64,000 nt of DNA, taken from contig NIVC01001475.1 of NCBI GenBank assembly GCA_002269645.1, forward strand, positions 186,001-250,000. The letters are read 5' to 3'. The position numbers and the translations under genes were made by a program. Of this stretch, positions 7,746 to 63,329 are shown one piece after another; the stretch's first letter is position 1; every line of letters starts with the position of its first letter. The stretch comes from Macrostomum lignano. Its lineage: Eukaryota. Below the pieces are notes generated by a model. The model had not been told where the DNA came from. It did no database searches and saw only the letters and a program-made list of their open reading frames with translations.

Positions 7746-8494
7746 GCAAAAACTAAGCAAGCGAATCAGTGCGCAAGATGATGTGAGAACACTGGCTAGC
7801 GTGGAGGCTGGGCCGGTGTGGGTAGCACTAAGGAGTAGGAGAAGTGCACCAATAAACGCACATATCTACTGCCATGCACCATGCAGTGCACCATGCATGT
7901 ACATGCAGGTATATGGCCATGTAGCAACTGCTGGTCTACCAGTTCATTGATAGAATTGTATGAGGCGACCAGCTTCAGGGCGCAATGTGCTGGCTGGCCT
8001 CCGTGTGGCCTGTAGGTTGAACCAGTTGAGCACGTACATACATGAAGCTGCCGCAGTATGATCACCCCATTTACTTTTTAGAGGATCTGATGACCAATTT
8101 TTTAACTGACACCCACCAGCCTTTCAGAATTAGTTTTTCCGATCGTAATCAGACAAAGAAAGCTGTACATTCTAAATCAATTGCAATTATGGCTATATCT
8201 GTATAGCGTTACATGTACAGTAGTTGCGTGACAGCATGACCACGTTTACGAAATTTCACTGATGATTCGCCAACAATTCACTGCAGCAAATAAAACGAAT
8301 TATCATTCGTCATCCAGACACAGCGAGGCTGCAGCTTCTACATCCCGTGGCCAATGGTAGGTGCCGCATGGTCATCGTGCTTAGACTGTGAGATCCTACT
8401 TAAGGGACTGATCAATTACAGAAATGCTCAGCTGCAGAGTTTTCTAGCGGTCGGAAACACTATTCCGTTGATGAGATTAACAAACAGGTTTCAG

Positions 8495-9420
8495 ATGTCA
8501 ATCAGAGGTGCAGCCGGCCTTATTCTGGCGTTGGCTTGTCTCGGAATTGCTTCGTTCAATCCTGCCGCGGTCGATGCTCTCGAAGGTACACTGCGTAGCT
8601 CCCGATCGTAGTAGCTGCGTTAATATTTTTTTTCGGTAGAATTTCAGAAGCATGAGCATAATATTATATATTATAATCCAAATTTTCAGATACGGAACCA
8701 AATGCGGCCATTCAAAGCTTGGATGGACTCCCATTGAACCAAGTGAAGATTCCTGAAAGCGGAAAGCTGTTTGATCCAGACGAGAAGTCTTCTCTTCAGT
8801 GGGCCAGTGACAGCAAAAGAGGCCAGATCAACAACAAGAACGTGTTCAGGTGGGGCAAGAGAGACCGGACCAACAACAAGAACGTGTTCAGGTGGGGCAA
8901 GAGAGACCGGACCAACAACAAGAACGTGTTCAGGTGGGGCAAGAGAGGCCGGACCAACAACAAGAACGTGTTCAGATGGGGCAAGAGAGGCCGGACCAAC
9001 AACAAGAACGTGTTCAGATGGGGCAAGAGAGGCCGGACCAACAACAAGAACGTGTTCAGGTGGGGCAAGAGAGGCCGGACCAACAACAAGAACGTGTTCA
9101 GATGGGGCAAGAGAGGCCGGACCAACAACAAGAACGTGTTCAGGTGGGGCAAGAGAGGCCGGACCAACAACAAGAACGTGTTCAGGTGGGGCAAGAGAGG
9201 CCGGACCAACAACAAGAACGTGTTCAGGTGGGGCAAGAGAGGCCGGACCAACAACAAGAACGTGTTCAGGTGGGGCAAGAGAGACCGGACCAACAACAAG
9301 AACGTGTTCAGGTGGGGCAAGCGAGACCGGACCAACAACAAGAACGTGTTCAGGTGGGGCAAGAGAGGTCGGACCAACAACAAGAACGTGTTCAAATGGG
9401 GCAAGCGAGGATCTATTTAA
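8495..9420 (+). CDS. Neuropeptide precursor 1 with 14 -NVF(R/K)Wamide peptides; join(8495..8585,8690..9420)
   Basis: Exon 1 encodes a signal peptide (MSIRGAAGLILALACLGIASFNPAAVDA). A phase-1 GT-AG intron (8586-8689) joins it in frame to 14 x 42-bp units: GQINNKNVFRWG x1, DRTNNKNVFRWG x4, GRTNNKNVFRWG x8, GRTNNKNVFKWG x1. Each is flanked by KR and ends in a Gly amide donor. Confidence 0.93.
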
Positions 9421-11021
9421 ATCATAACTTCAGGTTAATATTTCGGTAAATAAATTCCAACGAACTATTGAGTAAATCTAAAGAAGAAAAGCTCCCATGC
9501 AGGATTGATCAAGACGAGAGTAAATCTCGCGCAAAGAATGTACGCCTATGACTTTTCACATTTCATTTCACGCCTAAAAGGATGCTCCTTTAATCAGATG
9601 GCCGTGTAAATCGAGTCTTTAGGGTATATCTTCAAAATATGTTTGCATGTAGTTCAGTATAAGCTATAAAAAGTGATTTCGAGGAAGGAATTAGAAACGA
9701 GTACACAGTAAACTAGCTATCCATCCATTAAATGCCATACACTGTCATATTTCGTCACAAAAACACTGCATAACAATCGAGCATGATGCGATGGAATTTG
9801 ATGAATTCCATATCGCTGAATGGCAATTAACTTCTCGCGTCGCTTTTGAACAGTCGGAAAAAACCCCAACTGTAACGACAGATTTGCATAGAAATCGATA
9901 TTTTACGATGGCAGTTTACATATTTATTGACACACGTGGAGTCTAAAATAGGACTATTTTACTGCTTACAGCCGTTCCTGGATCGTACCAGTTATAAATG
10001 AAAGAAAATATCCGTGATGCAACGCACTATATAGAAGCATCAAAGAAGCAAAATTCATAATTCATCTGGAGTCTTTTTTGTAAAACCTGATATTTGCAAA
10101 CTATGCTACTATTATGAGAACCTATAGATATACATCTAGATGAAGACAGATATAATTTAAAGTTTAATCATCTGCAGAGGGCCTGAGCCTATCTACACAT
10201 GCATGGTCAAAACTCGATTAGCTACGGTACGATACAGCGCCTTACCTCCATGGGTGCGCTCAGCTGGCGTACTAACCGCAGTGAAGTTAGTCTACATTTG
10301 AATTGTTTAGCTACTACACTAGCTACAATGCGGTATTTCGTGTTTAGTAGACAAAATGAAAATCAACTAGCTTATGGCTGCAATGCTATGACAACTGTAA
10401 TTTCAGAATCAATCTTTTTTAATTAAAGAATCCTTGATGCTGTTAGCTCGTACAATTAGGCTATAGCTAAACCTCTCGTTTGTGGTCATAAAAACGTGCG
10501 TGAATTTACAATTACAGGACTTCTGTGTATTCAAGTTACACGAAGTTTCTGGCGCCTATAGCAATTTGATTGCCTACAAACAAAAGCGAAAGGAAATTAA
10601 AATTGCCTACACTATCTATGAAGCTGTGGTTATGATTTTAAGTTTAAAGAGAGACTTTAAGAGAGAGAGAGAGAGAAACAGCCTCAAATAATTGTATGCT
10701 CTGTGTGACCGATTAAAATGCGTACATTAAAACAGAAAACCAAGCATATTGGATGCACGTCGCATGTACGTCGTATATACATGTAGTAAAAATCAATTGT
10801 GATGCAAGCACTAGACAGCAGGCGCCTACAATTCTCCCCAACCAGAGAGATCCCCAGGGGATAAAAAACAAGTTCAGTTACTCAGTTATCAGCTCAAATA
10901 CCCCAGAGCAATCAAAATGGCCCGTCCGCGCACGAAACCCCTAGGATCACAATTTGTAGCTGAGCACTCTGTTACTGGCAGCTCTTGGATGTTCTCGCGT
11001 GGCGATGCTACCGCTGGGTAG

Positions 11022-11450: not shown

Positions 11451-13374
11451 CTTCTTCTTCTTCTTCCATTCGGGCGCGCTCGGGGCAGGGCCCATGGCAC
11501 CGGGCGTCAGATGGCGCCCGCCTTCCGAGGAAGTTCAACACCGCGGTGCAGTACTCGAAAACTGCCGCGGGCTCCGGGCTTGGCCCCAAGAGGCGGCAGC
11601 GGTGTAATGTCAGGGCGGGGCAGGAGATCAGCAGATGGGCCGCCGTCTCCTCTCCATCGCCACAAAAGCGGCAGGTGGGGGCCACCTCAACGCCGATGGC
11701 GGCCTGGAAGCCCCGCAGGGCCGGGCTGGCAAATCAGCCGCTCCTGCCGCCGCGTGAGGTCGCTCGTCGGCGGAGGCGGCAGGCGGCCCGCCGTGCAGGC
11801 AAAGTGTCAGGTCAGGCTAGCGAGCTCGTGCTCGCCGCCTCGGTGGCCGCCGCGTTGTAGATCTAGTGTCAGCGGGCGAGGCAGTGGCGGCGGACGGCAC
11901 CCTGCGCAGCAGCCAACGCGACAGCTCTGCAGGGTCTGCGGCCGCGAGCACCCACCGGAGGGCCTCAGCGATGGCCACTAGCTCGGCGTGGAAACTGGAC
12001 GTCACGTGGCCAGCGTGATGTTATGCTCGACCAGGACGCCGCTGCCGCCGTCCAGGACGCCGTCCTTCGCCGCTCCGTCGGTCCAGAGCACGGTGCGGGC
12101 GGGCGGCAGGGCGGCGAGCGTCTGCTCCGCCGCAGCTCTCCGGGCCTCCGGCAGGTTCCCCCGCGAGGTTGGGGACTGTAGCCCGAAGGTGACGGAGTCC
12201 AGGTCAGCCCAGGGAGGTGTCGTCGGGACAGCGTGGACGGGCTCTCGCGAGTAACCGCCTAGGCCCGCAGCGCTGCAGACGCTGCAGACGCTGGCCGCCG
12301 TCTCGCGCTAGCCGCGGGCACTTTGGATGCGGCGCACTTTTTCGGCGCCAGCTCCATCCGCCACTCGCTCGCCCAGTCGGAGACCGCGTCGATCGCAGCC
12401 TGCGCCTTCGTCTCGGCCTCCTCCACGGTCAGGCCTTGCACTGCGATGCACTGCCTTGCAGTCGGACGGAAGGTGGTCAGGCAGGTCGTTGATGTACAGC
12501 GCAAAGAGCAGAGGGGCAAGGACACTCCCCTGTGGCAGGCCCTCGCGGAAGAGCCGCCAGCTGCTCACAGCGCGCCGTCCACCCTGACGGCAGCACGGCG
12601 ATCGGCCAGGAAGCTGCTGAGCCAGCGGACCCTGGCCGCTGGGATGCCGGCGTTGTGCAGCTTGTGGAGCAAGCCCTGCTTCCAGACAGGTCGCCCAGGA
12701 TCACCGTGTTGGCGCCGGACGGGAGGTGCTGGGGGCTGAAGCGCTGCACGCGGTCGTCTCCTTCGGCCGTTCTGATCGGCTGGATGTAGAGGCAGTGGAT
12801 GTCCAGGCTCTCGACGCTCTTTCAGACGGGAAACCCGGACGCCGGCCCACTCCGTGGTGACATCATCGGGGGCGCAGGGTCCCTCCTACAGCACCTCGAA
12901 GCGCAGCTTCTCGCGGATGAGGATTGCAACGCCTCCTCCGCGCGTGGGGCCGCCGGAGCGCCGGCACTCGGTGGCGCCAGATCGCGTTGAACCCCGGCAG
13001 GCGCGGATCCCGTCCCTCGGTGGTGTGGGTATCTTGCAGACACGCCACCTCGACGCGCAGGTCCAGCAGTTCGAGCATCTTCCTTCTGCGTTGAGTTGCA
13101 GGAGGTGCAGGCCACTGGGGGGCCGCGCGCGCGGACCGCCGGGTCGGGGGGCGCCTCGCGCCGCCGGGGGCCCGCCGTTGAGGCTCGGCGGGCTGGTTCA
13201 GGCGTCGGCTAGGCATTTCATCGGTAGGGTGGACGCCAGATGCCAATTGGGCGGCGAAGAGACTGCGTTGCGGTGCTGGGCCTCGGGAAGGGCCTGTTGC
13301 TGGCCTGCATTTCGTAGGCCTTGCGGGTCCTCCGGAGGGCACCTCGGGTAGGCGCAGGCCGTTGCTCTCCCGGA
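11451..13374 (-). mobile_element. Internally deleted LINE (APE-RT-RNase H-zinc knuckle, I-group-like) nested in the Gypsy integrase
   Basis: APE motifs (LHLLQLN, VACLQDTH, RGGGVAILIR, VILGDL) fused directly to RT (GLLHKL, PQGSVLAPLLFALYIND), then RNase H (LWTDG, SSFHAELVAIAEAL), CRFC..ETAAHLLISC and a (GAA)n tail at 11451-11466. TSD GACCAC at 11445-11450 and 13375-13380. Confidence 0.88.
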
Positions 13375-16300
13375 GACCACCTCGATCGGGACGCCGTATC
13401 TGCCGAACAGCCTCCGCAGGAGGGGGATCACGCTCTCCGCCGTCGTAGAGTTGAGGAAATTGACTTCTGGGTACTTGGGATACAAGTTGGTGGTGACCAG
13501 CAGCATCTGGCCCTTGCAATGGGCCGTAGAAATCCATGCCTAGCAGCAGCCAGGCACCGTTCGGAATATCCGTCGGCGTCAGTGGTGTCTGTCGCAATCC
13601 GGTGGCCGCAGCCTGGCACAGTGTGCAGCAGTGGACGAATAGCTCGGAGTCGCTGCACATCCGAAGCCACCACACCTTCGTCTGCAGGCATTTAAAGGTG
13701 CAGTCGGCGCCTAAGATGACCGGTGTGCTCCAGTTGAAAGATCGGCCTGTGCAGCGACTCGAAGATGATGATGAGGTCGCCGCGGAGTAACACTCCGTCG
13801 CTTTCCGACAGCTCGCCGCTGATGGACTTGAAGGAGCGCTGGGCTGCCGCTCGCGTATCCCAGCGGCCGGTTCGAATTGCGTTCATCGCCGGTGCGCGAT
13901 GCTTCCGGAACCTGGTCGAGACTGAAGCCTTTCGGCACGGCCCCGGTCGACACGGGGTTGGCGAAGGCGGCGTCGAGCTCTTCACCGACATTCTGGACGC
14001 CGTTCTCGCAGTGGCTGCCGACTCAGCAGGTCAGCCTGGTTGGTCGAGCCTGGCCGGTAGAGCAGGTTGAAGCGGAGATGCTGAATGCGCAGCGCCATTC
14101 GCTCGATCCGCGGTGGCGGACGGGAGCCAGGCTTAAAAAGCGGCACGAGCTGTCGGTGGTCCGTCACCACGGTGAAGTCTGGGTCGCCAGCCAGATAGTG
14201 CTCAAACTTGAGATACCCAAATTTGATGGCAAGAGCCTCCCGCTCGATCTGCGCGTACCGCTGCCCCACCGGCGAGAGGGCTCTGCTGGCGTAGGCAAAA
14301 GGTCGGCAGCTACCGTCCGGCTGTCACTGTGAGAGGATGGCGCCGACGCCGATCGGAGATGCGTCCACCAGGAGCTCCATGTGCTGCCTGCGGTCGAAAA
14401 AGGCTAGCGTGTCCGCGTCTGAGATCGCCTTCTTGATGCCGTCAAGCGCCGCAGTGTGTTTTTCTGTCCACTCCCAGGCCTGGCCCTTCTTCGTCAGCTG
14501 CCGGAGTGGGGTGGCGAGGACAGCGAAGCTCGGTATGAACTTTGCCAGGAAGTTCGCGGTTCCCAGGAAAGAGCGGACGTCGGCCACGTTGGCGGGCTGT
14601 CGGAAGTTCTGCATGGCGTCAATTTTCTCGGCGGCCGGCTGCATGACCCGGGCGGTCAGGCGCATTCCGAGAAACTCGACAGTAGACGTGGCGAACCTAC
14701 ACTTGTCCTGATTGAGGGTGATACCGACCTCTCGGAGGTGCTGAAGGCAGGCGTCCAGCCTCTCATGGTGCTGCTTCATGTCGGAGGCGTAACCCATCCC
14801 GTCATCGTGCGCCCACCGGACGCCGTCAATGCCGCTGAAGATGCCAAGCGTGACTCGTTGAAGGATTTTCGAGGCATTTGTGAACCCCATACTGAGCCTC
14901 TTGAGCCGCATCAGTCCGAGGGGCGTGCTGAAGGTGAAGAGGTGACGGCTGCTCTCGTGAACTGGGATCTAATAAAAGGCCTTCCGGATATCGAGTTTGC
15001 TGAACAGCTTGGCGTCGGCCATTTCCTCGGTGATTTCATCCAGCGTGGGGATTTGCTTCTTCTCTGGGATGACGACAGTGTTGAGATCGCGGAGGTCCTG
15101 GTATATATTCTGACGCCACCGTCACCCTTGGGCACCACCACCATGTGTGACACCCGGGCGCTAGGACTTTTGACTGCCTCGATGCTGCCCTGCTTCTCCT
15201 AAGCCTTGAGCTCCTTCACTACGACCTCTTTCAGGTGCGCCGCCACACGTGAGGGCTCCTGGAAGACAGGAACAGCATCCTTGGACAGCTGGACCTGGAC
15301 CTCTACACCCTTGATGCAGCCGATGCCGTTGGAGACTTATTTGTGCCTCTTCAGGATGGCCTTGAGCTGCGGGACACTATACTGCTTGAAGGGTATGCTG
15401 TCGACGATGGCATTCTTGTTTTGCGGCTTGATAGCTTCAGGTCACTGGATCTTCAGCACTCCTAGCTTGAATGCGGGCTGGCGCCCAAGTATCGTCAGCC
15501 CGTCGCCGTCCATGATGTGGAAGGTCGCTGTTGTTTTGGCAGCTGTGAGAGGTGTCGGAAACTCATTATGCTGCAGCTGGCTCCGCTGTCAATCATTATA
15601 GGAAGCTGCCGGTTTGCCACCTGCACAGTCAGCGAGACGTCGGATGGTTATTTGTCGTGGTTGTACAGCGCGAACACGTCCGCGTTGACGGAGCTGTCGG
15701 CAGCTGTGAAGACAGCATTGGTGCAGATTCGCTGTTGTGGGGTCCGGCTGCTGTTTGACTGCCGAGGCTGACGGCAGGCAAAGCGAGGTGGTTGTACTTG
15801 CCACAGTTGTGGCAGATCTTGCCTTTTGCTGCGTCGCAGGTGGTGTGGCCTTTCTCGCCGCAGCGGTAGCAGGTTGCGCTGCTGCTGGTTGCTAGGCCAT
15901 CTGCTGGTCATCTGAGCCGGGCCAAGCCTGTCTGTCTACCTTGTCGCCCTTGGCAACGCTGGCCACCTGCGAGTCTGCCTTCTCCATCTCGGTGGCTTGT
16001 TCCTCCGCCTGATGTTTGCCTCCTGCGCAGCTTGTCAGAGCTGCAGGTTGCCACGAGCTGGTCTCTGATGAGCGAGTCCTTCAGCTGCTCAAAGTCGCAC
16101 GGCTCTGCCCAGTGCGCAGTCTGGCGTACCAGTACTCGAAGGACTCTCCAGTGGCCTGTGTGCATAGGCGGAACTGATAACTGGCGAATACTATTCTTTC
16201 TTCTGTCTTCAAAGCGTCCAGGCGTCTACCTGAAGGTGACTTGGCCGTCCTAGCTGTGCTCGCTGCAGGCTTGGCATCCTCGCGTATGATATCGGCGATT

Positions 16301-17373: not shown

Positions 17374-19452
17374 TGATGGGTTCGGCCTTTTAAGCCTGTA
17401 GCTTCGGGCCTCAGAACTCAGAAATGAATCGCTAAGAGCTCTGGCCTCTCACTCCTGTCAGATGGTCAGCCTCATGGTAGCTAGATTGTGGGCGAGCAGC
17501 AAGGTCCTATAGCTAGGAGAAGACAGCGAGAGACAAGCAGGGAGAATTTGAAAGGTAGAAATTAGCTAATCCGCAGATTAACTAACTCGCTGCCACCAGT
17601 CCGTGCGCCCCGGCTCACCAAACCGGAGCTATCGAAATCGGACTTCCGACTAGAGGGGCACTGCACTTACCTGCCATCTAGTGTCTTTTAGCTGTCTAAA
17701 TCTCGAAGTCATAGCCGAATAGAAGGGACGCTGCTGGGACTAAGATCGCATTGGCCATGCAGGGACAGAGAGGACTTTTGCAGGGGGTTCTTGCGCTGGC
17801 AAGCCTTCATACACTACTAAATGTACTATTTCATGACCGAATTCCCAGAAGTACATGTATAAGTACACGTAACTGCACGCTCTTGGCACTAAATGTGTTA
17901 ACCCTTCGACAGATAGCGATGATGTAGATGCATTGTCACTTTCGGAGATCTTTAGACTAATATTTAACTTACTTTAGCCGCTTAACTGCCTGTGACCGCG
18001 CCAAAGCGCCAGTCTGGCTCTTAATTTGCATGCTTAACATAATGATTTCTTAGATTGACTGGTTGACTGGGAACTGTGCCGCTTCCGGTCCACCGTGACC
18101 TCTGCCTCTAGATTTAGCCGCTCATCTCAGCTGGCATTGCGAAAAAGAAAGAAAACGCTAAGTCTTTAACTTTCAAATTTAACTTTCTCACTTAATCCGC
18201 AATCCTAAACACTTTAGATTGAGTTAGAGCAAATGGCTACTTTTAATATTAACTGACACTGCTGCCTCGAGATTGGCACACAAAAGCAAGTAAGCAAAAG
18301 TGCAAATCCTATCAGACTACCTAGGAAGGGGTCAGACAAAGGGTGCACCCAGTTAAGCAGGTCAAGAGAGCCTCTCACCAAACCAATCAGAGGACCTATC
18401 TGCCGGTAGCCAAGGAATCCACAGAGACCGAAGCGCTCAGATGGGATGCTGCTGCTGATCTTGACTGACGATTGCCGCCGCTGCTCTTCGCTTGCCTAGT
18501 CGTTGCTGCTCTTAGATGACTGCCGGGAGATGTTAATGATGCCTCTCAGGGGAACTTAGCTGTTGAAGCCGAAACTGCCGGGGAAAGGGGGATCAGGACG
18601 GCAGGACCAGAAGGGGAGGACCAGGGTCCGATCTCCAGTATGGCCGGGGAAAAGGCCAGGTAAAACCGCCAGGGGAAAACCGAGCGCGGGTCGAGTTGCC
18701 GCCTTATATAGATCTCACGCGGCCGATTTGTTATAACGCACGCCGAATTTTCCGATTGGCTGAGAGCTTTTGTTAAAATAGGCGCCGAATTTTCTGATTG
18801 GTCGAGCCGGGGGCAGTCAGGTCGACTCTGATTGGCTGAGCTCAAGACCCCAAAACCCACCCCACCAGGTGGCCTTCAGACCCGGTTGCATTCATAACAT
18901 AATAAACGACAGGCCCATTCAGCAAAACGCCGGGGAATTTTCCAGACGAGAATGCTAGAATCTGAAAAAAAACATAGACGGCCATCACTGAGACTTGTAA
19001 GCTCAAATCCAAAACCCAACCAAGGTACATTGACTATTTACAGTGTGCATATAGTATAATTATAGCAATGTAAGAAAGTAGTCTACTGACATAGGAAAAT
19101 CAGCAAAACGTAACTCAAATAAACAACACCAAGAAAGCTAAAGACCTCTTTGACCCAGACACTGTTTCCAAAAGTGACAGCTAGACGGCATAATCACTGA
19201 AACAAAAAAAGCACAAATTGCAGAACGATTTCTAAAACGTTCCTTATTTAGACTTTAGGTAATCCGTTCAAACGACAGCTGACCTTTCACGTAAACAATA
19301 AAATTGAAAAAGTACATTCGACTATTTATCATAATTATAGCATGGCACTTATTTAGCTGAAGAGAATGGAAAAAATCCTAAGCTACCTACTGACAGTAGG
19401 AAAAGCTAAAGAAAAAACGTTAGTTTAAAAAGATTAAACTTTGCGTGGATCA
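17374..19452 (-). mobile_element. Solo LTR A (~2.08 kb), CTCT TSD
   Basis: Begins TGATGGG and ends ATCA; CTCT at 17370-17373 and 19453-19456; blocks of homology to the element at 20978-22890. The right boundary is less certain than for LTR B. Confidence 0.7.
18700..18842 (-). promoter_or_regulatory. LTR promoter: three CCAAT boxes plus TATA, firing leftward
   Basis: The minus strand has three CCAATC motifs spaced ~35-40 bp apart, followed by CTATATAAGG near 18705-18712; the same layout occurs in LTR B. Confidence 0.55.
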
Positions 19453-20977
19453 CTCTGTTATATTTGCGTTGTTGTATGCAAAAATCCTTCTAAATTATCT
19501 CTATTTATCGTTTCCTTAGAATAACCTCTCTTGTAGGATCAGCTAATGCAGCGTTAAGAACTGTATTAATTAAATCCGGAAAATAGTGGCGTTTACTGGG
19601 ATCAAGGGTGTCCAGCGGTAGGCTCCTAATCTTCTAACACCTTCACGGTTTCTTTTAACGCCTAATGCCTAGCGCCTAATCTTAGCCTTCACGGCTTATG
19701 TACATCGATTCTTCACGACTTCAATCTCCTTCAATCTCTCTATCTGAGTCTGCACGACTTCGATGTCCCTATTCTCCCTCAAGGTCGTGGTCCTTGATTT
19801 CTATTGTGTGTGTGTGTGTTTCACGCACTGAAATTTACTGAGCTTTCACGCCTCTTCGCTTCACGCTTTTTGAAATAACAAAAAGATATATATTAAAATT
19901 GGAGGAAAATTCACCAAGACAAACGGTTATAACGTTTACTTTCTGCCCAGGGGGCCTTTATAAAGATTTCATAGTTCACAGCTATTAGCTGAAGCGAAAA
20001 TTAAAAAAAATTACCAGGTTTATAACAAATGGATGTTTTAACAAATACGAAACGTTTTATACCAAAAAAACTAAAGAAATTCGATCAGTATTAGTATTAC
20101 CCAAAAATGATGTTCTGGCAGCCAAATAACTTTTGCGCGGGTATCTGATTTTTTACTGCCCACCATGGATGACTGTTTTTGAAATTCTATTGACAGGAAC
20201 TTAATTATCACTACGCAAAACGAGCGGCAATTTGCGCAGAATAGGCACTTTTCAAATGATATATAAATTTTCTAGCGTCAGTCAAAAACCGCTTAGCAAT
20301 ATCCAACCACTACAGCTTATAATATACGTGAAAGGATCCTTACGAAAAACAGGCGAATGGAAAATACCTGCAAGTAGCTAAAAATCTTGCAATAGATGTA
20401 GAGCAAGACCTACATGATGTAAATGTGCTACAGCGGAAAGTTCGCTACTGTACGCGCAAGTCGCGTTATGGGGTCGGCCATCATAAACCCGAAAAATCAA
20501 AACTTCCAAAGCACTTCCCTATCATCATTCCTATCAGAAAAGCTCGTTAAATTTTTTCTGGAAAATCAAGTGAGCAAATTTAGCCTTAAGACCTAAATTG
20601 TGTCAAAATTAAAAAATTCCTAGAAATTATTTGCGTTAAAAAACGCAATCTCGCAGGCAGCTAGTAAAATGCACAGGCAGATCAAATCTGATACACATGG
20701 TAATCCAGCGAACGATTTCTGAAGAAAATGTATCGAAAATGCTTAGACAAAAAATCAATCGCAGCGATATAGATCTTAATAAAAGCTGTTGTAGCTTGTT
20801 GAACCAACAATTTCTTAAAACCAAATGATATACGAAGCTGTTTCTACATACTGTGGCCAATGTTAATCTCCAGTACACGGTCATTTTGATGCTTAGACAG
20901 TGCGATCATATATTACGTTGATTAGATTAACAAGCAGCTTTTTCAGATGTCAATCAGAGGTGCAGGCGGCATTATTC

Positions 20978-22890
20978 TGATGGGTTTCGACCTGGGCTCC
21001 TTGTTAGGAAGCCTTCGGGCCTCAGGCCTCAGAAATGAATCAATTAGAGTCCTGGCACTCCTGTCAGATGGTCAGCCCCATGGTAGCTTGATCGTGTGGC
21101 GAGCAGTCTAGGTCCTATAGCTAAGAGAGGGACAGCGAGAGACGAGCAGGGAGAATTGAAGGTAGAAATTAGCTAATCCGCAGACTAAAGCTAACTCGCT
21201 GCCACCAGCCCGTGCGTCCTGACTAGACACCGGCTCTCTCCTGCCAACTAGTGTTTGCTGTCAATCTCGAAGTCATAGCCGATGATAAGGGACACTGCTG
21301 GGACTAGATCGCATTGGCCATGCAGGTACAGAGGGGATTGGCAGCAGGACAGTGGGGAGACATGGGGCTACAGTACTAGCTAAATACGAAATACGGCCTT
21401 CCTTCGCGCCAACTAGCCTCTCATAGCGCTGATGATAGACTAACTCGAACTTCAGAGACCGCATGATTCATTACCCGAGCCGCTTGGCTAACCTAGAGTG
21501 CACAAAGTACATCTCTGGCGCCGATTCTGCACTTCTGGCAGTTTTGCTCACTGATTTGGTAGATTGATCGACTGAGAACCGCCTTGCCATTGGTCCACTG
21601 TGACCGGCGCCTACTAGCTTAGCTACTCATCTGAGCCATCGGCGAACAAAGAAATAAAACCGATAAAAATAACTGTTAGATTTAACCTTCTCCTTAGATC
21701 ACTTCGCACTTCAGATTGAATTGGAGTTTCAGACTACTAGTAGTATTATTAAGTGATTTCTGCCTCAGTAACAGCACTACTGAACAAAATGAGCAAAAGT
21801 GTGCGCCTAATTCAGCTACTGAAACAGGGGACAGATAGGGGATCACCCAATCAAGCAAGTCTAGGTAGCCTCTCACCCAACCAATCAGAAACTCAACAGC
21901 CGGAGACCAGGAAATCCACAATGACCAAATCGGCTTGATGCTTCGCAGCTGTAGACTCGGGATGATGCTGACACAATCTTCGCTGATAGCTAGCAGGTGA
22001 TGATCTTCGCTTGATGTTCGCTGCTGACGACCGGGGGACTCGTCCTTGATGATGATGGGGGGAAGTCGCAATCCGGGGATCAAGAAACGACGGTCGCGCT
22101 CCGGGAACCAGAAGTTGCGTGCTGGACCCGAGCAAGAGTAAGATGCGTCCGAGCGGGCCAAAAACTCCGGTTTAAATAGCCGCCAACTGGACCGCAGTTT
22201 GTTATAACGGAACACGTCGATTCTGATTGGCTGAGCCGTTTTGTTAAAATGAGCGCCGAATTTTCTGATTGGCTAAGCTTGTTGCTACCCAGAATCACGT
22301 GACCAAGAGATCCTATCAGTTCCCACAGGGTCGTAGAAAGATGACAGGTGCGGCCATAAATCACTCAAAATCGCAACAAAATGATTTATGACTTTTCGCG
22401 TAGGATTGACAGAAATTAATGAAAAAATATACATTAGAAAGCTCTTATTAAATAGAAAGTGAAGATAATGAAGAGAAATTGCTAATCACTAATCCCAAAG
22501 TACTTTTAGGGGTAAAACGCATAGCTGTCAAAGCTGTCACACGCTCGAGTGAATCCGAACAATAGGCTCTGACCTCATAAATCTTGATGGCCTGTCAAAA
22601 TGATGAGAAAAAAGCTACCGCCCGCATCCTCTCAGACCATCTGGCGCCCGTCTCAACACTGAGTGAGGCGCAGGTGGCCGTCAGACCAACTTCGGAAGCG
22701 ATGATTTACGACCCAAAAAGCTACGCCTATGTTATTATGACTACTAGTATGGCCAGACATTATATCTAGTATAGATTCTATGACAATTTGCAGAAAAAGG
22801 ATAAAAATGCCCATCGCCCACTGTTAGTAGGCTAGTAAGTTTAGAGCCCATGTGCTAGCGCGGGATTTGGGAAAAAGTGCGTCCTCATCA
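20978..22890 (-). mobile_element. Solo LTR B (1913 bp), TG...CA ends, 4-bp TSD ATTC, inside the signal-peptide exon
   Basis: TGATGGG...CCTCATCA; ATTC at 20974-20977 and 22891-22894; the flanks rejoin into sequence colinear with gene 1 exon 1. Confidence 0.88.
22168..22280 (-). promoter_or_regulatory. LTR B promoter: two CCAAT boxes plus TATTTAA
   Basis: Minus strand GCTTAGCCAATCAGAA, GCTCAGCCAATCAGAA, then CTATTTAAACC; homologous to 18700-18842. Confidence 0.5.
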
Positions 22891-24236
22891 ATTCTGGCGT
22901 TGGTTTGTCTCGGAATTGCTTCAGTCCATTCTGCTTCTGCCCCACGCGATGCTCTGGAAGGTAGGCGCGCTACCGAAACGTTTTTTTAACCTAATTATAC
23001 TTTTGAATAGTTGAAGATCGAAATTCAGTCAAATAAAACCTGTAACTTTATGCACTTACTTTCCGTTAGTGAACTAAGCGAGGCCACTCAAGGCTTGGAT
23101 TGGGCTCCCATTGAACCATGACGAGACACTTGTTGGAAGTGAAAAGCTGTTCGATGCAGATGAGACGTCTTCTCTTCACAGGGCTAGTAACAGCAAGCGA
23201 GGCCGGTCCAGTTCCGGCAACGTGTTCCGATGGGGCAAGCGAGACTACGGCAACGTGTTCCGATGGGGCAAGCGAGACTACGGTAACGTGTTCCGATGGG
23301 GCAAGCGAGACTACGGCAACGTGTTCCGATGGGGCAAGCGAGACTACGGCAACGTGTTCCGATGGGGCAAGCGAGACTACGGCAACGTGTTCCGATGGGG
23401 CAAGCGAGACTACGGTAACGTGTTCCGATGGGGCAAGCGAGACTACGGCAACGTGTTCCGATGGGGCAAGCGAGACTACGGCAACGTGTTCCGATGGGGA
23501 AAGCGAAGCTGAGTTCGGCTGGGGCAAGCAAGGAATCTATTCAAATTATAACTTGGGGACAAATATTTTGTCAAATAAATGCGAATAATCACCGAGATGA
23601 TCGAGTAAAACTTGTGCAAAAAAGGTGCCTGTAAGACTTCCGCTTCTCATTTCAAGCTATACATGCACTTAAGGCTGATTCACTCTGCCAGCGAATGAGC
23701 CATTAAATCACACACGACCTATATTTACAGTCGGGATCCCACCAAATTTGGTCTTATTTGAAGCCGCGCCGATGTGAAGTCCTGATGTTTTTAAAGTTCT
23801 CTCTAATAATAAAACCAGTAATCGATGCAAGAAAATATATACGAAAGGAAACTCACTAGAGGAACGTCAAAGGAGCCGTTCGACGCCAAGTGGCGTACTG
23901 AATAAGCTAATCTGAATTCCAACGTGGCAGTAGCTATAGAAAGGGTTTGCAGTGTGTAAAACTTGACATACGAGCGTAGACATCTTGTGATCACTGTGAA
24001 AATGTATGAATATAATTGAAAGGATTTTTCTTATCTGCAGATGGGCTTTCGATGGTCAAAACTCAATTAATTAATCTTTTGAAATTTTTATCCTGCACAA
24101 CTTCTATAGGTTGTTATTAAAGTCGTTAGATAAACCTACAGCTACTGTTCCTGTTCATGACAAAGTTACTACCAGAGAAACTAACAAGTGTGGTATATTG
24201 AGGTAAATAGGGGTTGAGCCAATAGGAGTTGCAGGA

Positions 24237-27564: not shown

Positions 27565-29848
27565 CACCATTTTACCCTCGCTTTTGAACAAACTCCGTTT
27601 CACTTTAGACAGTCGGAACTTCAGTTTAGACACTTTTAGACTGGAGCCCCGAATCTACATTCACTATCAACAAACTTTGTTTCAGTATCGACAGCTAAGC
27701 TTTGTGGTGCTACACTTCTATCTATTTACATAGGCAAGTAAGGAAACGCACATCCAGATCTAGGCGAAACTCCCTTTCACTTTCGACAAACGCCACTTCT
27801 TAAACAGTCTATGGTCTAAGCTGCTGAAACTCCGTTTCACTTTAGTCAACCAACATTCAAGATAGACAAGATACATTCACTTTAGACATGAACTCACACG
27901 GGAGGTGTGCAAAGGTTTCTTAAGCATGTTCATGGAAATTTCCAAGGATAAAAACTTTCATTGTAACGGAAGATGGCGTGCAACGAGGATTTTTTTATCA
28001 ATAAACAGTTAGTTTGGCGGCCTAATTTAAAAGGCATTTGAGAATGCAGGACTGTTCCGAAAAAAAATTGTTTAACAGCGTCGTGATTAAAACGGCAAAG
28101 CCAGCAGAAGCGAAACGATAGTTCAGCGATGGGTTCTGATTTCCATTAGCCATCAATTGGCTGAGACGCCAAGCACCGTGGCAGATACCTGAAGCAATGG
28201 CTGAGCCACCGTGCCACCTCTGGAGTGATGCAGTTGGCGGTGCCGTCCACCTCACGGAGTAGAATGTCTCGGCGGTACGCCGCCAGGCTGCGACCAGCAA
28301 GCTGCTGCTCGGTCGGCCTGATGAAGGAATCTTGGATCGCCGACAGTCGACGCTTCAGAGCCGCCTTCCAGCATGATATCGCGTTCTCAACTTGGGTGAG
28401 AAATGGGCTGTAGGGTGGCAGTCGTCTCACTTCCACAGCGTCTTCGACCTCGTAGCTTTCGGCGTCATTGTGGCTGCTGACGTTGTCTATGACAACACTG
28501 ATGCTGCTGTCCGGAAACACGCTGTGGAAGTTGGCGATTGTGATTGTGAGAAACTCGCCGAATCTCTCCTTTGTCATGCCGCTGTCGTATGACTGGAAGT
28601 GCACGATTCCAGCAGCCGGGCTTACTGCCAGGCAGACGGTGATGCGCTGTCCCTTCTGTCCAGAAACCTGTCGGTAACACGCACTGTCCACGAAGAGATC
28701 GTCCATAGGATCGCCGCATCCATGTGTTGAAGACAAACTCGTCAATAAATATCTTCTCTGTGTCAGATGCTTCGGGCGAGCACATCCACTGAGCAAATTG
28801 CTCACGAGCGGCTACAACCCTTGGCGAGTTGCGCTCAGCTGGAAGATCTCGTGCCAGCTTCGTTGTGAACAGTGCACCGTCGAGTTTTATGCTCAGTGTC
28901 TTTTCTGAGACATGCTGCTTCTCAGGAAAAGCTTGTCTGAGCATGGTGTTCATCTCTTTCAGAGTCAGCAATGGATTCTGCTCCACGATTGCGCACAAAT
29001 ATTCTTGCATCTCACCATCCCACTTCACATTCTTGGCTCCGCCGCACGAAAGCTTCTCCACTCGTCCACTCCTCACAATTGAATATGCGGTCGTTCTTTT
29101 GATGTCTGCAAGTTGAGAGGCCAGTAGGATAAAATCTTCACCCTTCTGGTAAGTGGAGAGAAGTCGCTGCATGCCTGTCATGGTTGCTCACTGGCTGTCG
29201 CTGTTGCGCTGGAGCCTCGTCTTCAAAGTCGCTTTCACTTTCGTCTTCGTAACCAGGCTCCTCTTCTAGGTACGAATCTTCACTGCCCTCCATCTTTTTC
29301 AGGGCTTGCTTTAGCGAATATCTTTAGCGAATAGGCTTCAGTGTTTGGAGCGAAGGGAGAGTAGGCTGAGACTTTGGTTTGGAACTTTGGTAAGGTCTGG
29401 CCGGCGACCCTGCCACCCCACACTGTTCAAAGGGGTGAAAAGGGTGTCTTAAAAGGTATCTATGGTCAAAACCCCTCTTTCAGCCAACATTAGGCGTAAA
29501 CAAATGACGCATCTAAGAATCTGTCTAAAGTGAATGTATCTTGTCTATCTTGAATGTTGGTTGACTAAAGTGAAACGGAGTTTCAGCAGCTTAGACCATA
29601 GACTGTTTAAGGAGAAGTGGCATTTGTCGAAAGTGAAAGGGAGTTTCGCCTAGATCTGGATGTGCGTTTCCTTACTTGCCTATGTAAATAGATAGAAGTG
29701 TAGCACCACAAAGCTTAGCTGTCGATACTGAAACAAAGTTTGTTGATAGTGAATGTAGATTCGGGGCTCCAGTCTAAAAGTGTCTAAACTGAAGTTCCCA
29801 CTATCTAAAGTGAAACGGAGTTTGTTCAAAAGCGAGGGTAAAATGGTG
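27565..29848 (-). mobile_element. IS630/Tc1-superfamily DNA transposon with ~325-bp TIRs and TA TSD
   Basis: 27565-27888 is nearly the exact reverse complement of 29522-29848; TA at 27563-64 and 29849-50; internal direct repeats AACTCCGTTTCACTTTAG. Confidence 0.95.
28146..29293 (-). pseudogene. DDE transposase with two frameshifts
   Basis: HTH (QRLLSTYQKGEDF...KRTTAYSIVR), FIDE, VIDNVSSH and LPPYSPFLTQVEN motifs; a 4-nt insertion near 29170 and a 1-nt shift near 28680. Confidence 0.88.
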
Positions 29849-33309: not shown

Positions 33310-33818
33310 CAGGCCCTAGGCCTTAAATGCATCATATATGCATTATGCTATTTAACGCAATACACTAGGCACAAGCCTAAAGCAAATTTATTAATCATAC
33401 TCAGGACAGGGCAAGGCACACCGAATGTCCTACCCAGCAGGCAGCAGCCCAGAGTCTGAAAATTTAAGTAAATTCGACTTACTCGAAGGTCTGGCTATTA
33501 ATTGCTTTCGAAGAAAATCAAGGAAATCATGTGATTCAACCTCACCATATACGCGAACTATTTTATCCTACTTAAATCAGTAGTAGCACCAGCATAAGCA
33601 TTGAAAAAATACTAAGAAAAATTTCCCGTGACTTAATTTTTTTATCGAGCCAGAAGATCTGAATCGGTTTTCGTAAACTTTTTTACTACCTAATTCGGAA
33701 AAAAATATCTAAAAATCTTAGCGCTCGACAGTAGCAGTTAATGCGCTCGTGTCGTGCTCGTGACTTTCTGAAATTATTTTGTCTCCCCTTCCCTTTTGAC
33801 TCTGCTGTTATGTATATA

Positions 33819-33951
33819 ATCTTTGTCTGTTCTTTTGGTTCCTATGGCAGAGAAAGGCCGAGGACGCTGTTCTCAGGCCGAGGCGAAGCCGAGGCCTTAG
33901 AATTGCGTCTGAGGTCTTTCTGCCATAGACACCAAAAGAACAGACGAAGAT
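33819..33951. mobile_element. Short hairpin MITE (~40-bp TIR containing CTATGG/CCATAG)
   Basis: ATCTTTGTCTGTTCTTTTGGTTCCTATGGCAGAGAAAGGCC / GGTCTTTCTGCCATAGACACCAAAAGAACAGACGAAGAT. Confidence 0.8.
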
Positions 33952-33964
33952 CGTACTTAATCTA

Positions 33965-34625
33965 CAGATATTGGAAGCGACTGGGAGTGGGAGTGAGGTA
34001 TTCGTCAAAAGCGGGGGTGTGGTGGCGCAGCCCCCCACATTTAACCATAGACATAAAAATTAAAGTAAAAGATTCGATGCTTAAATTAAAAGCGAGAAAG
34101 GAAAGGTTTGGGCAGCTTGGGCACACCCCAGATCATGAGCGCTGCCTTCCGTGCATTTATAAAATCTACGACGGCTACCGACCGGAGCAATGTAAGCACG
34201 ACAACCTCTTTCTGACTTGGTTTCGAAGTGAGTCTGCCATTAAGAGCGACAGATGGTACAAGAATGGACCTATCGGCCGGCATACTCTCGACTCCATTGT
34301 GGCGAATATCACCAAGCCCGTGTCTACGGATGGTAAATTCTCAAACCAGTCTCTAAGGAAGACTTGTGCCAGCACGTTGCATCGGGCTGGACTGGCTAGG
34401 GACGATATAGCCCGCGTCACTGGACATTCGTCCAACGCTATTGAGAGGTACATACGGCTAGACGTCCAGGACCATTCGCGTATGACCTACGCTCTACACG
34501 CCGGAGGAGCCGTGGAGTCCAATGGGCGGACCAATGAGCAAGATGTCGTGTCTGAAGGTACTACCAAGAAGATGCGCATGACTGTCCACGGTGACACCAA
34601 CACCGTAGAAATCATGTTCGAGTGA
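33965..34625 (+). CDS. Tyrosine recombinase catalytic domain, Crypton/DUF3504-like (5' end uncertain, possibly partial)
   Basis: RC..IYKIY...RP...LFL...WYKNGPIGRHTL...FSNQSLRKTCASTL..AG....IARVTGHSS..IERY matches the HxLR / GH / Y box of Crypton-type YRs, with His replaced by Gln. The listed ORF's N-terminus runs through a MITE. Confidence 0.8.
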
Positions 34626-44242: not shown

Positions 44243-50463
<6,221 letters not shown>

Positions 50464-55760: not shown

Positions 55761-56147
55761 AATTCCTCTTCAAAAGTGTTTTTCAGAAACATCCCAGTAA
55801 AGTGCGTTGGGTTGAGAAGCTCGAACTATGGGCTTCATCAGATAGGTTTGTGACGCCAGCTAATGCGTTTCTCTTTGCCACCCCATTAGTTCTAATGAGA
55901 GGCGTGTAGAAAAATATCGATGCAGTCGGTTGTGTCCCAGTCTCACAGCTTCATCTTTTTCACACTTTCATCCCGTTGACAGGCCCCCGCAAGATGTAGC
56001 TTAGAACAGGCACGGGTACAAAGTCCCTAGACTGCAAAGTGCTTTTAAACCTCTGTTGTAACATTTTTTTAATTCAGAAATGTTGCAATATGTCCTGAAA
56101 ATTGTCTGGAACCTGCTAAAGAACAGATTGAATACAAATTGAAAGCA

Positions 56148-56524
<377 letters not shown>

Positions 56525-57028: not shown

Positions 57029-57411
<383 letters not shown>

Positions 57412-59724: not shown

Positions 59725-60030
<306 letters not shown>

Positions 60031-63282: not shown

Positions 63283-63329
63283 GTAGAGCAAGGGGGATTG
63301 TGGAGTGGATGTTTTTACATTGAGCCCTT

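What the first reader, a model, noticed from the sequence alone, without database searches (positions are those of the whole stretch)
20947..23512. Tandem paralogue with independently homogenised peptide repeats (DYGNVFRWa versus [G/D]RTNNKNVFRWa)
Seen: the signal peptide, intron position, pro-region, 3'UTR and >0.6 kb of downstream flank are homologous to gene 1. The repeat unit differs (33 bp versus 42 bp) while the NVFRWG-KR core is constant. Within each gene the copies are near-identical. The N-terminal extension flips from basic (RTNNK) to acidic/aromatic (DYG). Inference: ligand diversification by duplication plus concerted evolution, with selection on the C-terminal pharmacophore. DYGNVFRWa is closest to cestode GNFFRFamide.
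Basis: partly seen in the sequence, partly recalled or inferred. Interest (0 to 1): 0.7.

Follow-up and report, generated by a model that had tools for sequence, protein, structure and literature searches.

The report
Tandem FRWamide neuropeptide genes, one disrupted
Two neighbouring genes in an unidentified invertebrate each encode many back-to-back copies of an NVFRW-amide neuropeptide whose repeats were made uniform separately in each gene, but the second gene is split by a 1.9 kb mobile-element insertion and carries an early stop codon, so it is probably a recently broken copy, not a working new ligand.

Summary
Gene 1 (8495-9420) encodes 14 units of 42 bp, [G/D]RTNNKNVFRW-GKR. Gene 2 (20947-23512) encodes GRSSSGNVFRW plus 8 DYGNVFRW-GKR units of 33 bp. 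They share the start codon, a phase-1 intron, the pro-region, the poly(A) signal, about 165 bp upstream and a degenerate downstream flank. Independent homogenisation is supported by fixed synonymous Arg-codon differences between arrays (0/5000 permutations), divergent edge units and a 4-unit block duplication in gene 2. The NVFRWGKR core shows 3 synonymous and 0 replacement differences.

- Exon 1 is split after codon 11 by a 1911-bp dispersed repeat (20980-22890; target duplication; TGATG...CATCA ends; second copy at 17374-18841).
- A -4/+1 frameshift pair puts a TAA two codons after the homologous splice acceptor.
- Its last unit is a frameshifted relic.

Gene 2 is most likely a recently inactivated paralogue. 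Rescue would need cryptic splicing.

The closest database relatives are annelid FRWamide precursors (Urechis, Capitella), not cestode GNFFRFamide. Similarity is confined to the repeats, and their Cys motif is absent here. The source taxon is unresolved. I rate this a new member of a known kind, of moderate interest.

The parts
8331..8494 (+). Gene 1 promoter-proximal block conserved with gene 2. It includes GTGGCCAATG and an acceptor-like TTTCAG directly before the ATG.
   Evidence: about 75-87% identity to 20837-20946. No homology further upstream.
8495..8585 (+). Gene 1 exon 1: start codon and signal peptide MSIRGAAGLILALACLGIASFNPAAVDALE, ending in phase 1 before GT.
8586..8689 (+). Gene 1 intron (GT...AG, 104 nt).
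8690..9420 (+). Gene 1 exon 2 coding part: pro-region, 14 peptide units, GSI and stop. The whole precursor is 273 aa.
8821..9408 (+). Gene 1 peptide array: 14 x 42 bp, [G/D]RTNNKNVFRW-G-KR. The edge units are divergent (GQINNK... first, ...FKW last).
9449..9454 (+). Gene 1 AATAAA poly(A) signal.
9411..10220 (+). Gene 1 3'UTR and downstream flank carrying collinear homology islands to gene 2.
17374..18841 (+). Second, diverged copy of the repeat family that is inserted in gene 2. It has the same TGATGGGTT 5' end and is collinear over element positions about 34-1300.
   Evidence: Its 3' end could not be determined.
20837..20946 (+). Gene 2 promoter-proximal block homologous to gene 1.
20947..20979 (+). 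Gene 2 exon 1a: ATG plus 10 codons (MSIRGAGGIIL). The last 6 nt, ATTCTG, are the first copy of the target-site duplication.
20980..22890 (+). 1911-bp dispersed-repeat insertion splitting the signal-peptide exon. Its termini are TG...CA with the short inverted repeat TGATG/CATCA if it is counted from 20978. The target duplication is ATTC(TG).
   Evidence: No Pfam domain in its longest ORF. Read-through stops at 21109.
22891..22960 (+). Gene 2 exon 1b: second ATTCTG copy, then the rest of the signal peptide (ALVCLGIASVHSASAPRDALE), then a phase-1 GT donor. It has no in-frame ATG of its own.
22961..23069 (+). Gene 2 intron at the homologous position (GT...AG, 109 nt).
23070..23512 (+). Gene 2 exon 2 up to its TGA stop. 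It has a 4-nt deficit at its start and an extra T at 23100/23101, so the stretch between is read out of the ancestral frame. An in-frame TAA lies at 23075-23077.
23201..23506 (+). Gene 2 peptide array: one 42-bp unit (GRSSSGNVFRW-GKR) plus eight 33-bp units (DYGNVFRW-GKR). The GGC/GGT pattern C,T,C,C,C,T,C,C indicates duplication of a 132-bp four-unit block.
23511..23534 (+). Relic of the ancestral terminal unit, homologous to gene 1's last VFKWGKRG. It is frameshifted and lies at and after the stop codon.
23574..23579 (+). Gene 2 AATAAA poly(A) signal.
23535..24069 (+). Gene 2 3'UTR and downstream flank carrying collinear homology islands to gene 1.

Best explanation
The two loci are same-strand tandem paralogues, 12.45 kb apart start to start. 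They arose by duplication of a segment of about 1.9 kb, running from about -165 to about +800 past the stop. The segment carries a two-exon gene for a secreted, multi-copy, C-terminally amidated neuropeptide precursor: signal peptide, short acidic pro-region, then back-to-back X-NVFRW-Gly-Lys-Arg units.

After duplication, the interior of each array was repeatedly overwritten by unequal crossing-over or replication slippage. Gene 1 fixed a 14-codon unit, and gene 2 fixed a shortened 11-codon unit. The first and last units escaped this process and still record the ancestral 14-codon form. Purifying selection kept NVFRWGKR unchanged, that is, the receptor-binding end plus the amidation and cleavage signals.

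Gene 1 is intact. In this sequence gene 2 has since been hit by a 1.9-kb repeat-family insertion in codon 11/12 of the signal peptide. It also carries a compensated frameshift pair that places a TAA two codons into exon 2. It is therefore most probably a recently inactivated copy whose array still looks perfect only because it was homogenised recently.

Shown: the anatomy, the homology, the homogenisation pattern, the core constraint and the disruptions. Inferred: secretion, cleavage and amidation; the mechanism of homogenisation; and the non-functionality of gene 2.

The confidence given is for the whole statement. Tandem paralogy with independent homogenisation alone is about 0.9, and gene 2 being non-functional in this haplotype is about 0.6.
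For: - Arrays and units.
- Gene models with GT-AG introns at the same phase.
- Region-by-region identity.
- Flank tests against shuffles.
- Fixed synonymous differences. The FRW Arg is AGG/AGA in all 13 gene-1 FRW units against CGA in 9/9 gene-2 units. The KR Arg is AGA in 12/14 against CGA in 9/9. Permutation gives 0/5000.
- Edge units keep the ancestral length, and a relic terminal unit survives in gene 2.
- Core: Sd = 3, Nd = 0 over 19 non-synonymous sites, against dN about 0.2 in the pro-region.
- Insert: a direct ATTCTG duplication, a reconstituted exon at 89% identity to gene 1, and a second family copy in the window.
- In-frame TAA and frame shifts.
- No in-frame ATG for exon 1b, and read-through terminates at 21109.
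- Database relatives are multi-copy xFRW-GKR neuropeptide precursors, including one named FRWamide in Urechis. That precursor is expressed in larval neurons according to PMC7737342.
Against: - Gene 2's array has no stop or frameshift across 306 nt.
- The three differences among its eight short units are all synonymous. About 22% of random changes would be synonymous.
- Its splice sites, poly(A) signal and promoter block are retained.
- In-frame cryptic GT...AG pairs exist that could remove the insert. An AG 9 nt downstream of the canonical acceptor would skip the TAA in frame.
- No transcript, peptide or population data could be obtained, because neither gene's product nor any close relative is in the searched databases.
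Confidence: 0.6

Rival explanations
1. Gene 2 is a functional, diverged paralogue. Under this reading the inserted repeat has become a new intron or is polymorphic, a shifted acceptor at 23078|23079 avoids the TAA, and DYGNVFRW-amide is produced as a ligand with altered N-terminal chemistry.
For: - The array is intact, and the only within-array differences are synonymous.
- The promoter block, the donor and acceptor sites and AATAAA are conserved.
- In-frame cryptic splice pairs exist. For example 20959|...|22859 would give MSIRARDLGKSASSSILALVCLGIASVHSASAPRDALE, which keeps the hydrophobic core.
- The alternative acceptor restores an open frame of 176 aa.
Against: - The cryptic sites match the consensus no better than 5-6 of 9 donor positions, and they would have to be used almost exclusively.
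- The canonical acceptor is upstream of the rescuing AG and has the better polypyrimidine tract (11/14 against 8/14).
- Two independent lesions each need a separate rescue.
- Array perfection is equally expected from recent homogenisation without selection.
Confidence: 0.3
2. The two copies are an assembly artefact: collapsed or mis-joined haplotypes of a single locus.
For: The window is extremely repeat-rich, with 81 TRF rows, which can mislead assemblers.
Against: - The copies differ in unit length (42 against 33 bp) and in fixed codon choices across every unit.
- They are about 21% diverged in the pro-region, and the intron is unalignable.
- Flank homology ends within about 165 bp upstream and about 0.8 kb downstream.
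- About 11.4 kb of other sequence, including a Gypsy RT fragment, lies between them.
Confidence: 0.03
3. The arrays are ordinary non-coding minisatellites that happen to be open in one frame.
For: Many other minisatellites in the window also give long spurious ORFs.
Against: - Both arrays sit in frame behind a homologous ATG, hydrophobic leader and phase-1 intron.
- Each unit ends in Gly-Lys-Arg.
- All between-array core differences are synonymous.
- Independent annelid precursors share xVFRW-GKR units.
Confidence: 0.02

Closest known systems
Annelid FRWamide precursors: Urechis unicinctus FRWamide (GenBank MT162138, PMC7737342), Capitella teleta CAPTEDRAFT_185359, and unnamed ENA/Logan/metagenome relatives P0001, P0002, P0004, P0006 and L003
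   Same: All have a signal peptide followed by multiple x-[VI]FRW-Gly-Lys-Arg units. Some units are near-identical to those here, for example ...PKNVFRWGKR in P0002...SNVFRWGKR in P0004 and DSARNKVFRWGKR in P0001. These are the best database hits, with E from 1e-16 to 1e-6.
   Different: The annelid precursors have 5-8 heterogeneous units separated by acidic spacers, and an N-terminal C-x(2-3)-C-x(7-10)-C-x-C motif. Where genomic sequence was seen they are intronless ORFs and single-copy within +/-10 kb. The window genes have 9-14 back-to-back homogenised units, no Cys motif, an intron and a tandem paralogue. No similarity was found outside the repeats.
Lophotrochozoan LFRFamide / RYamide-LFRWamide (sNPF-type) precursors (PMC6389622, PMC4208409; P0007, P0008, P0063, P0083, P0103, P0119, L008, L009)
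   Same: They contain one or two [LI]FRW-GKR units and share the x-F-R-aromatic-amide theme. In oyster, LFRFamides act on an sNPF-type receptor (PMC4208409).
   Different: These precursors are dominated by xFRY and xFRF units, and they end in a conserved PHVPFRFG[DE][EK] peptide. The window genes have neither.
Flatworm FMRFamide-like peptides such as cestode GNFFRFamide
   Same: They are short amidated peptides with the pattern hydrophobic, Phe, Arg, aromatic-amide. The only named innexin hit for this window is a cestode protein, so a flatworm source is not excluded.
   Different: The C-terminal residue is Phe, not Trp. No sequence-level link was found in any search. The resemblance covers 3-4 residues only.
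Multi-copy neuropeptide genes with homogenised repeats and paralogues carrying variant units (mollusc FMRFamide and LFRFamide genes, PMC4208409; cnidarian RFamide and GLWamide preprohormones, from general knowledge)
   Same: The architecture is the same: many identical amidated copies flanked by processing sites, with copy-number and variant differences between paralogues.
   Different: The peptide families are different. Here the two paralogues are adjacent, and one is transposon-disrupted.
CCK/sulfakinin-type peptides, for example oyster Cragi-CCK2 pEFDYGGGRWamide (PMC6219549)
   Same: Gene 2's unit shares Asp-Tyr-Gly ... Arg-Trp-amide with it. An Asp next to a Tyr is the usual context of tyrosine sulfation.
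   Different: The oyster CCK precursor encodes two peptides, not a long tandem array. Gene 1 and the first unit of gene 2 lack DY, so the motif is derived here. This is a resemblance only.

Membership tests
Annelid FRWamide precursor family | Multiple x-FRW-Gly units flanked by dibasic sites behind a signal peptide | tested here: met
   gene 1 has 13 FRW-GKR units plus 1 FKW-GKR unit, and gene 2 has 9 FRW-GKR units. The N-terminal hydrophobic leader was judged by inspection only, because no signal-peptide predictor was available.
Annelid FRWamide precursor family | Significant sequence similarity to named members | tested here: inconclusive
   E = 6e-10 to Urechis FRWamide and 8e-16 to P0001. 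All matched stretches lie in the repeat part, and nothing matches the signal peptide (residues 1-30). Repeat-driven scores cannot separate homology from convergence.
Annelid FRWamide precursor family | N-terminal Cys motif C-x(2-3)-C-x(7-10)-C-x-C in the pro-region. It is present in P0001-P0006 and in L003. | tested here: not met
   there is no Cys in either window pro-region.
LFRFamide / RYamide-LFRWamide (sNPF-type) precursors | Mixed xFRF/xFRY/LFRW units and a C-terminal PHVPFRFG peptide | tested here: not met
   the window precursors end ...KRGSI* and ...KRS*, and they contain only NVFRW or NVFKW units.
LFRFamide / RYamide-LFRWamide (sNPF-type) precursors | Peptides activate an sNPF-type GPCR | not testable with these tools
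   This needs a receptor assay.
Luqin / RYamide / ambulacrarian RWamide family | One or two peptide copies plus a C-terminal two-Cys, Pro-rich peptide (PMC4208409) | tested here: not met
   there are 9-14 copies and no C-terminal Cys peptide.
CCK/sulfakinin family | A conserved, often sulfated Tyr in one or two peptides per precursor, with the motif ancestral to the gene | tested here: not met
   DY occurs only in the derived short units of gene 2. It is absent from gene 1 and from gene 2's first unit.
LTR / solo-LTR insertion (for the 20980-22890 insert) | TG...CA termini with a short inverted repeat, and a 4-6 bp target-site duplication | tested here: met
   TGATGGG...CCTCATCA flanked by ATTC/ATTC (or ATTCTG). 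The empty site is given by gene 1.
LTR / solo-LTR insertion (for the 20980-22890 insert) | Full-length family members in which two such repeats flank gag-pol | tested here: inconclusive
   one further copy exists, sharing only the 5' 1.3 kb. It is not paired around the nearby Gypsy RT. No external copies were retrievable.
Concerted evolution of tandem coding repeats | Units are more alike within an array than between paralogous arrays, fixed differences include synonymous sites, and edge units are less homogenised | tested here: met
   core identity is 0.965/0.991 within arrays against 0.885 between them (0/5000 permutations). The first and last units are divergent, and gene 2 shows a 132-bp block duplication.

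The most novel reading that the evidence does not exclude
Gene 2 is alive. Under this reading the 1.9-kb repeat has been converted into a new intron inside the signal-peptide exon, and the gene delivers eight copies of DYGNVFRW-amide. The newly acquired Asp-Tyr-Gly head would create a tyrosine-sulfation site and a sulfakinin/CCK-like shape (compare oyster pEFDYGGGRWamide). That would be a captured example of an FRWamide ligand being re-tuned towards a different receptor by concerted evolution of a single variant unit.
Probability: 0.08. Interest if true: 0.65.

Novelty: new member of a known kind. Interest (0 to 1): 0.35.

Why it matters
The pair is a clean, small-scale illustration of how multi-copy neuropeptide genes evolve. 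Array interiors are overwritten independently in each paralogue, while the edge units and flanks keep the record of common ancestry, and the amidated C-terminal core is held fixed.

It extends FRWamide-type precursors, which the Urechis paper reported as having no recognisable orthologue outside Urechis, to a lineage that is barely represented in public protein data.

It also gives a practical caution. A perfectly uniform repeat array is not evidence that a paralogue is functional, because here the same gene carries a transposon in its signal peptide and an early stop codon. If gene 2 proves to be expressed, it would be a useful natural experiment in ligand re-tuning and in turning a transposable element into an intron.

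Tried and rejected
- **Strict local alignment of the flanks** stopped at the poly(A) signal.
- **A permissive Smith-Waterman alignment** gave an off-register, non-significant downstream alignment (z = 2.4). I replaced it with short-word BLAST plus a chained-score shuffle test.
- **Taxon identification failed.**
  - The innexin exon finds nothing above 41% identity, and the only named hit is a cestode.
  - The Gypsy RT finds nothing above 39% identity and nothing named.
  - Cluster look-up returned no names.
  - Rfam and tRNA scans were empty.
- **No same-species DNA was found.** The metagenome protein-guided scan found nothing. The degenerate two-unit DNA pattern found only annelid-type FRWamide and RYamide genes plus noise.
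- **The exhaustive HMMER search** was dominated by compositional and periodic hits, such as a 3119-aa repeat protein and spurious ORFs over satellites. It added no relative of the pro-region.
- **Classifying the insert was only partly successful.** Its longest ORF has no Pfam domain. The 3' 600 nt has no counterpart in the second copy. A candidate 3' end with a CTCT duplication for copy 2 is no better than chance.
- **The idea that the two repeat copies are the LTR pair of one element was rejected**, because gene 2's promoter and exon 1a lie between them.
- **Structure prediction was not attempted**, because these precursors are repetitive processing substrates, not folded domains.
Full report
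**What is there.** Tandem Repeats Finder reports a 42-bp array at 8813-9410 (14.2 copies, 96% matches) and a 33-bp array at 23215-23506 (8.8 copies, 98% matches), both on the + strand. Reading the sequence and the ORFs and building spliced models gives two genes.

Gene 1:
- ATG at 8495.
- Exon 1 at 8495-8585, encoding MSIRGAAGLILALACLGIASFNPAAVDALE.
- A GT...AG intron at 8586-8689, in phase 1.
- Exon 2 at 8690-9420.
- AATAAA at 9449-9454.
- The 273-aa product carries 14 units: GQINNKNVFRW, four DRTNNKNVFRW, eight GRTNNKNVFRW and GRTNNKNVFKW. Each unit is followed by Gly-Lys-Arg.

Gene 2:
- ATG at 20947.
- A phase-1 donor at 22960|22961 and an acceptor at 23069|23070.
- Stop at 23510-23512 and AATAAA at 23574-23579.
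- One 14-codon unit (GRSSSGNVFRW-GKR) followed by eight 11-codon units (DYGNVFRW-GKR).

A degenerate core pattern hits exactly these 23 units and nothing else in the 64 kb, against 0 expected by chance.

**Homology of the two loci.** BLAST and global alignments give these identities:
- Exon 1: 89%.
- In-frame pro-region: 79%.
- 3'UTR up to the poly(A) signal: 78%.
- A promoter-proximal block of about 165 bp: about 75% (8331-8494 against 20837-20946). It contains GTGGCCAATG.

The intron has the same position and phase in both genes, but its sequence is essentially unalignable. Downstream of the poly(A) signal there are only short collinear islands: 9518-9573 with 23603-23657, 9987-10049 with 23814-23876, and 10203-10220 with 24052-24069. 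Their chained score is 151.7 bits, which exceeds all 200 dinucleotide shuffles (maximum 123.3). Upstream of -165 there is no signal.

The haplotype-artefact alternative is rejected for three reasons. The copies are 20-35% diverged outside the core. They differ in unit length and in fixed codon choices. They are separated by other sequence that includes a Gypsy RT/RNase H fragment.

**Independent homogenisation.** In codon register, the Arg of FRW is AGG or AGA in all 13 gene-1 FRW units (the 14th reads FKW, AAA) and CGA in all 9 gene-2 units. The Arg of the KR site is AGA in 12 of 14 gene-1 units and CGA in all 9 gene-2 units. Core identity is 0.965 within gene 1, 0.991 within gene 2 and 0.885 between them. 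No label permutation out of 5000 reaches the observed contrast.

Three further details fit unequal crossing-over or slippage acting on array interiors:
- The first unit of each gene is divergent, and in gene 2 it keeps the 14-codon length of gene 1. The ancestor therefore had 14-codon units, and the 11-codon DYG unit is derived.
- Gene 1's last unit is the most divergent (GGT, FKW, CGA). Gene 2's last ancestral unit survives only as a frameshifted relic at 23511-23534 (GAGTTCGGCTGGGGCAAGCAAGGA), followed by the homologue of gene 1's GSI-stop tail.
- The GGC/GGT pattern in gene 2 (C,T,C,C,C,T,C,C) shows duplication of a 132-bp four-unit block.

**Selection.** Between the genes, the NVFRWGKR core has 3 synonymous and 0 replacement differences over 19 non-synonymous sites. 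The in-frame pro-region has dN about 0.20 and dS about 0.50, and the signal peptide has dN about 0.15 and dS about 0.13. At the pro-region rate, about 3.8 replacements would be expected in the core, so zero is unlikely (roughly e^-3.8). Constraint on the C-terminal core plus its amidation and cleavage signals is therefore supported for most of the time since duplication. All counts are small.

The first lesion is in exon 1. Homology to gene 1 runs 20911-20979 and resumes at 22891. The 1911 bp between (20980-22890) are flanked by a direct ATTCTG duplication. Removing them together with one ATTCTG copy restores an exon that aligns codon for codon with gene 1.
- The insert is a member of a dispersed repeat family. 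A diverged, collinear copy lies at 17374-18841 and starts with the same TGATGGGTT.
- Counted from 20978, the insert has TG...CA ends with a TGATG/CATCA inverted repeat and a 4-bp duplication, which is LTR-like.
- Its longest ORF has no Pfam domain, and its 3' third has no counterpart in the other copy. Its class is therefore left open.
- Read-through from the ATG ends at a TAG at 21109. Exon 1b has no in-frame ATG.

The second lesion is in exon 2. Relative to gene 1, exon 2 of gene 2 begins 4 nt short and has an extra T at 23100/23101. The ancestral reading ELSEATQGLD (compare gene 1 EPNAAIQSLD) now lies in another frame, and the frame dictated by exon 1 reads Val-Asn-TAA, with the TAA at 23075-23077.

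Each lesion has a conceivable rescue. Weak in-frame cryptic GT...AG pairs could remove the insert, and an AG 9 nt downstream of the acceptor would skip the TAA. However, the canonical acceptor is the upstream of the two AGs and has the better pyrimidine tract.

The uniformity of the array does not prove function, because recent homogenisation gives the same picture. Its three internal differences are all synonymous, which is only weak evidence for selection, since 22% of random changes would be synonymous. I therefore put about 0.6 on gene 2 being a recently inactivated paralogue in this haplotype and about 0.3 on it being functional through non-canonical splicing.

**Relatives.** A word-indexed search of 5.8 billion proteins with the gene-1 precursor returns eight hits. 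They include:
- Urechis unicinctus 'FRWamide' (P0003).
- Capitella teleta CAPTEDRAFT_185359 (P0005).
- Four unnamed ENA/Logan proteins (P0001, P0002, P0004, P0006).
- More weakly, two proteins of the mixed FRY/FRF/FRW type that end in PHVPFRFG or a close variant (P0007, P0008).

The exhaustive HMMER search of 1.84 billion representatives adds only compositional or periodic matches and other multi-copy amidated-peptide precursors. Nothing there aligns to the signal peptide, and almost nothing to the pro-region. A metagenome pattern scan adds one more annelid-type FRWamide gene (L003) and two RYamide/LFRWamide genes.

The annelid FRWamide precursors contain units such as PKNVFRWGKR, SNVFRWGKR and DSARNKVFRWGKR. 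They are therefore much closer to the window peptides than GNFFRFamide is. They differ from the window genes in several ways:
- They have heterogeneous units with acidic spacers.
- They have an N-terminal C..C....C.C motif that is absent here.
- Where genomic DNA was retrieved, they are single intronless ORFs with no second array within +/-10 kb.

According to the literature read here, FRWamide was reported as having no recognisable orthologue outside Urechis, and it is expressed in larval apical-organ and ciliary-band cells (PMC7737342). Annelid RYamide genes encode LFRWamides related to mollusc LFRFamides, which act on an sNPF-type receptor (PMC6389622 and PMC4208409).

So the window genes work like FRWamide precursors, but membership of that family by descent is unproven. 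The shared feature is the short peptide motif, and one consistent family feature, the Cys motif, was tested and not met.

**Source organism.** It is unresolved.
- The window carries an innexin exon (Pfam E = 1.6e-25), so it comes from an innexin-bearing invertebrate.
- The best innexin relatives are 38-42% identical, and the only named one is from the cestode Dibothriocephalus latus.
- A Gypsy RT finds nothing named and nothing above 39% identity.
- Neither gene's product nor any close relative of it is in the searched protein databases, so no transcript or population evidence could be brought to bear.

**A resemblance worth recording.** DYGNVFRW-amide shares Asp-Tyr-Gly...Arg-Trp-amide with the oyster CCK/sulfakinin-type peptide pEFDYGGGRWamide (PMC6219549). 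Asp-Tyr is the usual sulfation context. Because gene 1 and gene 2's own first unit lack DY, this would be convergence at most. It is the basis of the low-probability novel case.

**Verdict.** The functional inference of ligand diversification is undercut by two disabling features in gene 2, and the cestode comparison is replaced by annelid FRWamide precursors. This is a new member of a known kind of gene architecture. Its interest is moderate, and it would rise if gene 2 proves to be expressed.

Noticed in passing
window 8489-8494 and 20941-20946: Both FRW genes have an acceptor-like TTTCAG immediately before the ATG. This suggests either a 5'UTR intron or a trans-splice acceptor. The conserved upstream block also carries GTGGCCAATG (8345-8354 and 20851-20860).
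   Followed up: no
window 27615-29798: A Tc1-like DNA transposon. Its DDE_3 and HTH ORFs (28146-29181, minus strand) are frameshifted. It is bounded by long terminal inverted repeats of about 275 nt that are 99% complementary (27615-27888 and 29522-29798), so it looks like a young insertion. The arms reach the edges of the scanned region and may extend further.
   Followed up: partly
window 36545-37566: A large near-palindrome. Arms of up to 179 nt are 95-98% complementary, and they are built largely from 15/32-nt tandem units (TCTCGTTTCGCCGA and its complement), around a spacer of about 440 nt. It could be the ends of a foldback-type element.
   Followed up: partly
window 12863-15202 (minus strand): A Gypsy-type RT/RNase H fragment (Pfam RVT_1 and RT_RNaseH_2) lies between the two FRW genes. 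Its best database relatives are only 31-39% identical and unnamed, so this is a poorly sampled lineage.
   Followed up: partly
window 33741-34625: An ORF with DUF3504 and a weak Phage_integrase (tyrosine recombinase) match, possibly Crypton-like (my reading, not tested).
   Followed up: no
window 47474-50371 (minus strand) and 45305-45709 (minus strand): A 965-aa open frame built of 21-bp and 42-bp Ser/Thr/Pro/Ala-rich repeats, ending in a Cys-rich stretch that looks EGF-like by eye. The nearby ORF has weak EGF matches and a hydrophobic stretch that may be a transmembrane segment. They look like exons of mucin-like surface proteins.
   Followed up: no
window 62662-63333: An innexin exon (Pfam PF00876, E = 1.6e-25). 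Its nearest relatives are only about 40% identical, and the sole named hit is from the cestode Dibothriocephalus latus.
   Followed up: partly
window 45885-47256, 56146-57411 and 59725-60034: The window has an unusual density of long tetranucleotide microsatellites: (GTCA)n, (GATA)n, (CAGA)n, (TAGA)n and (AACT)n, each 0.3-0.6 kb. It also has dozens of minisatellites, for 81 TRF rows in 64 kb.
   Followed up: no
L003 about 1000-1700; L008; L009: Metagenome contigs carry one further annelid-type FRWamide precursor with the N-terminal Cys motif (L003) and two RYamide/LFRWamide-type precursors (L008, L009). The FRWamide family is therefore wider than the single species in which it was named.
   Followed up: partly
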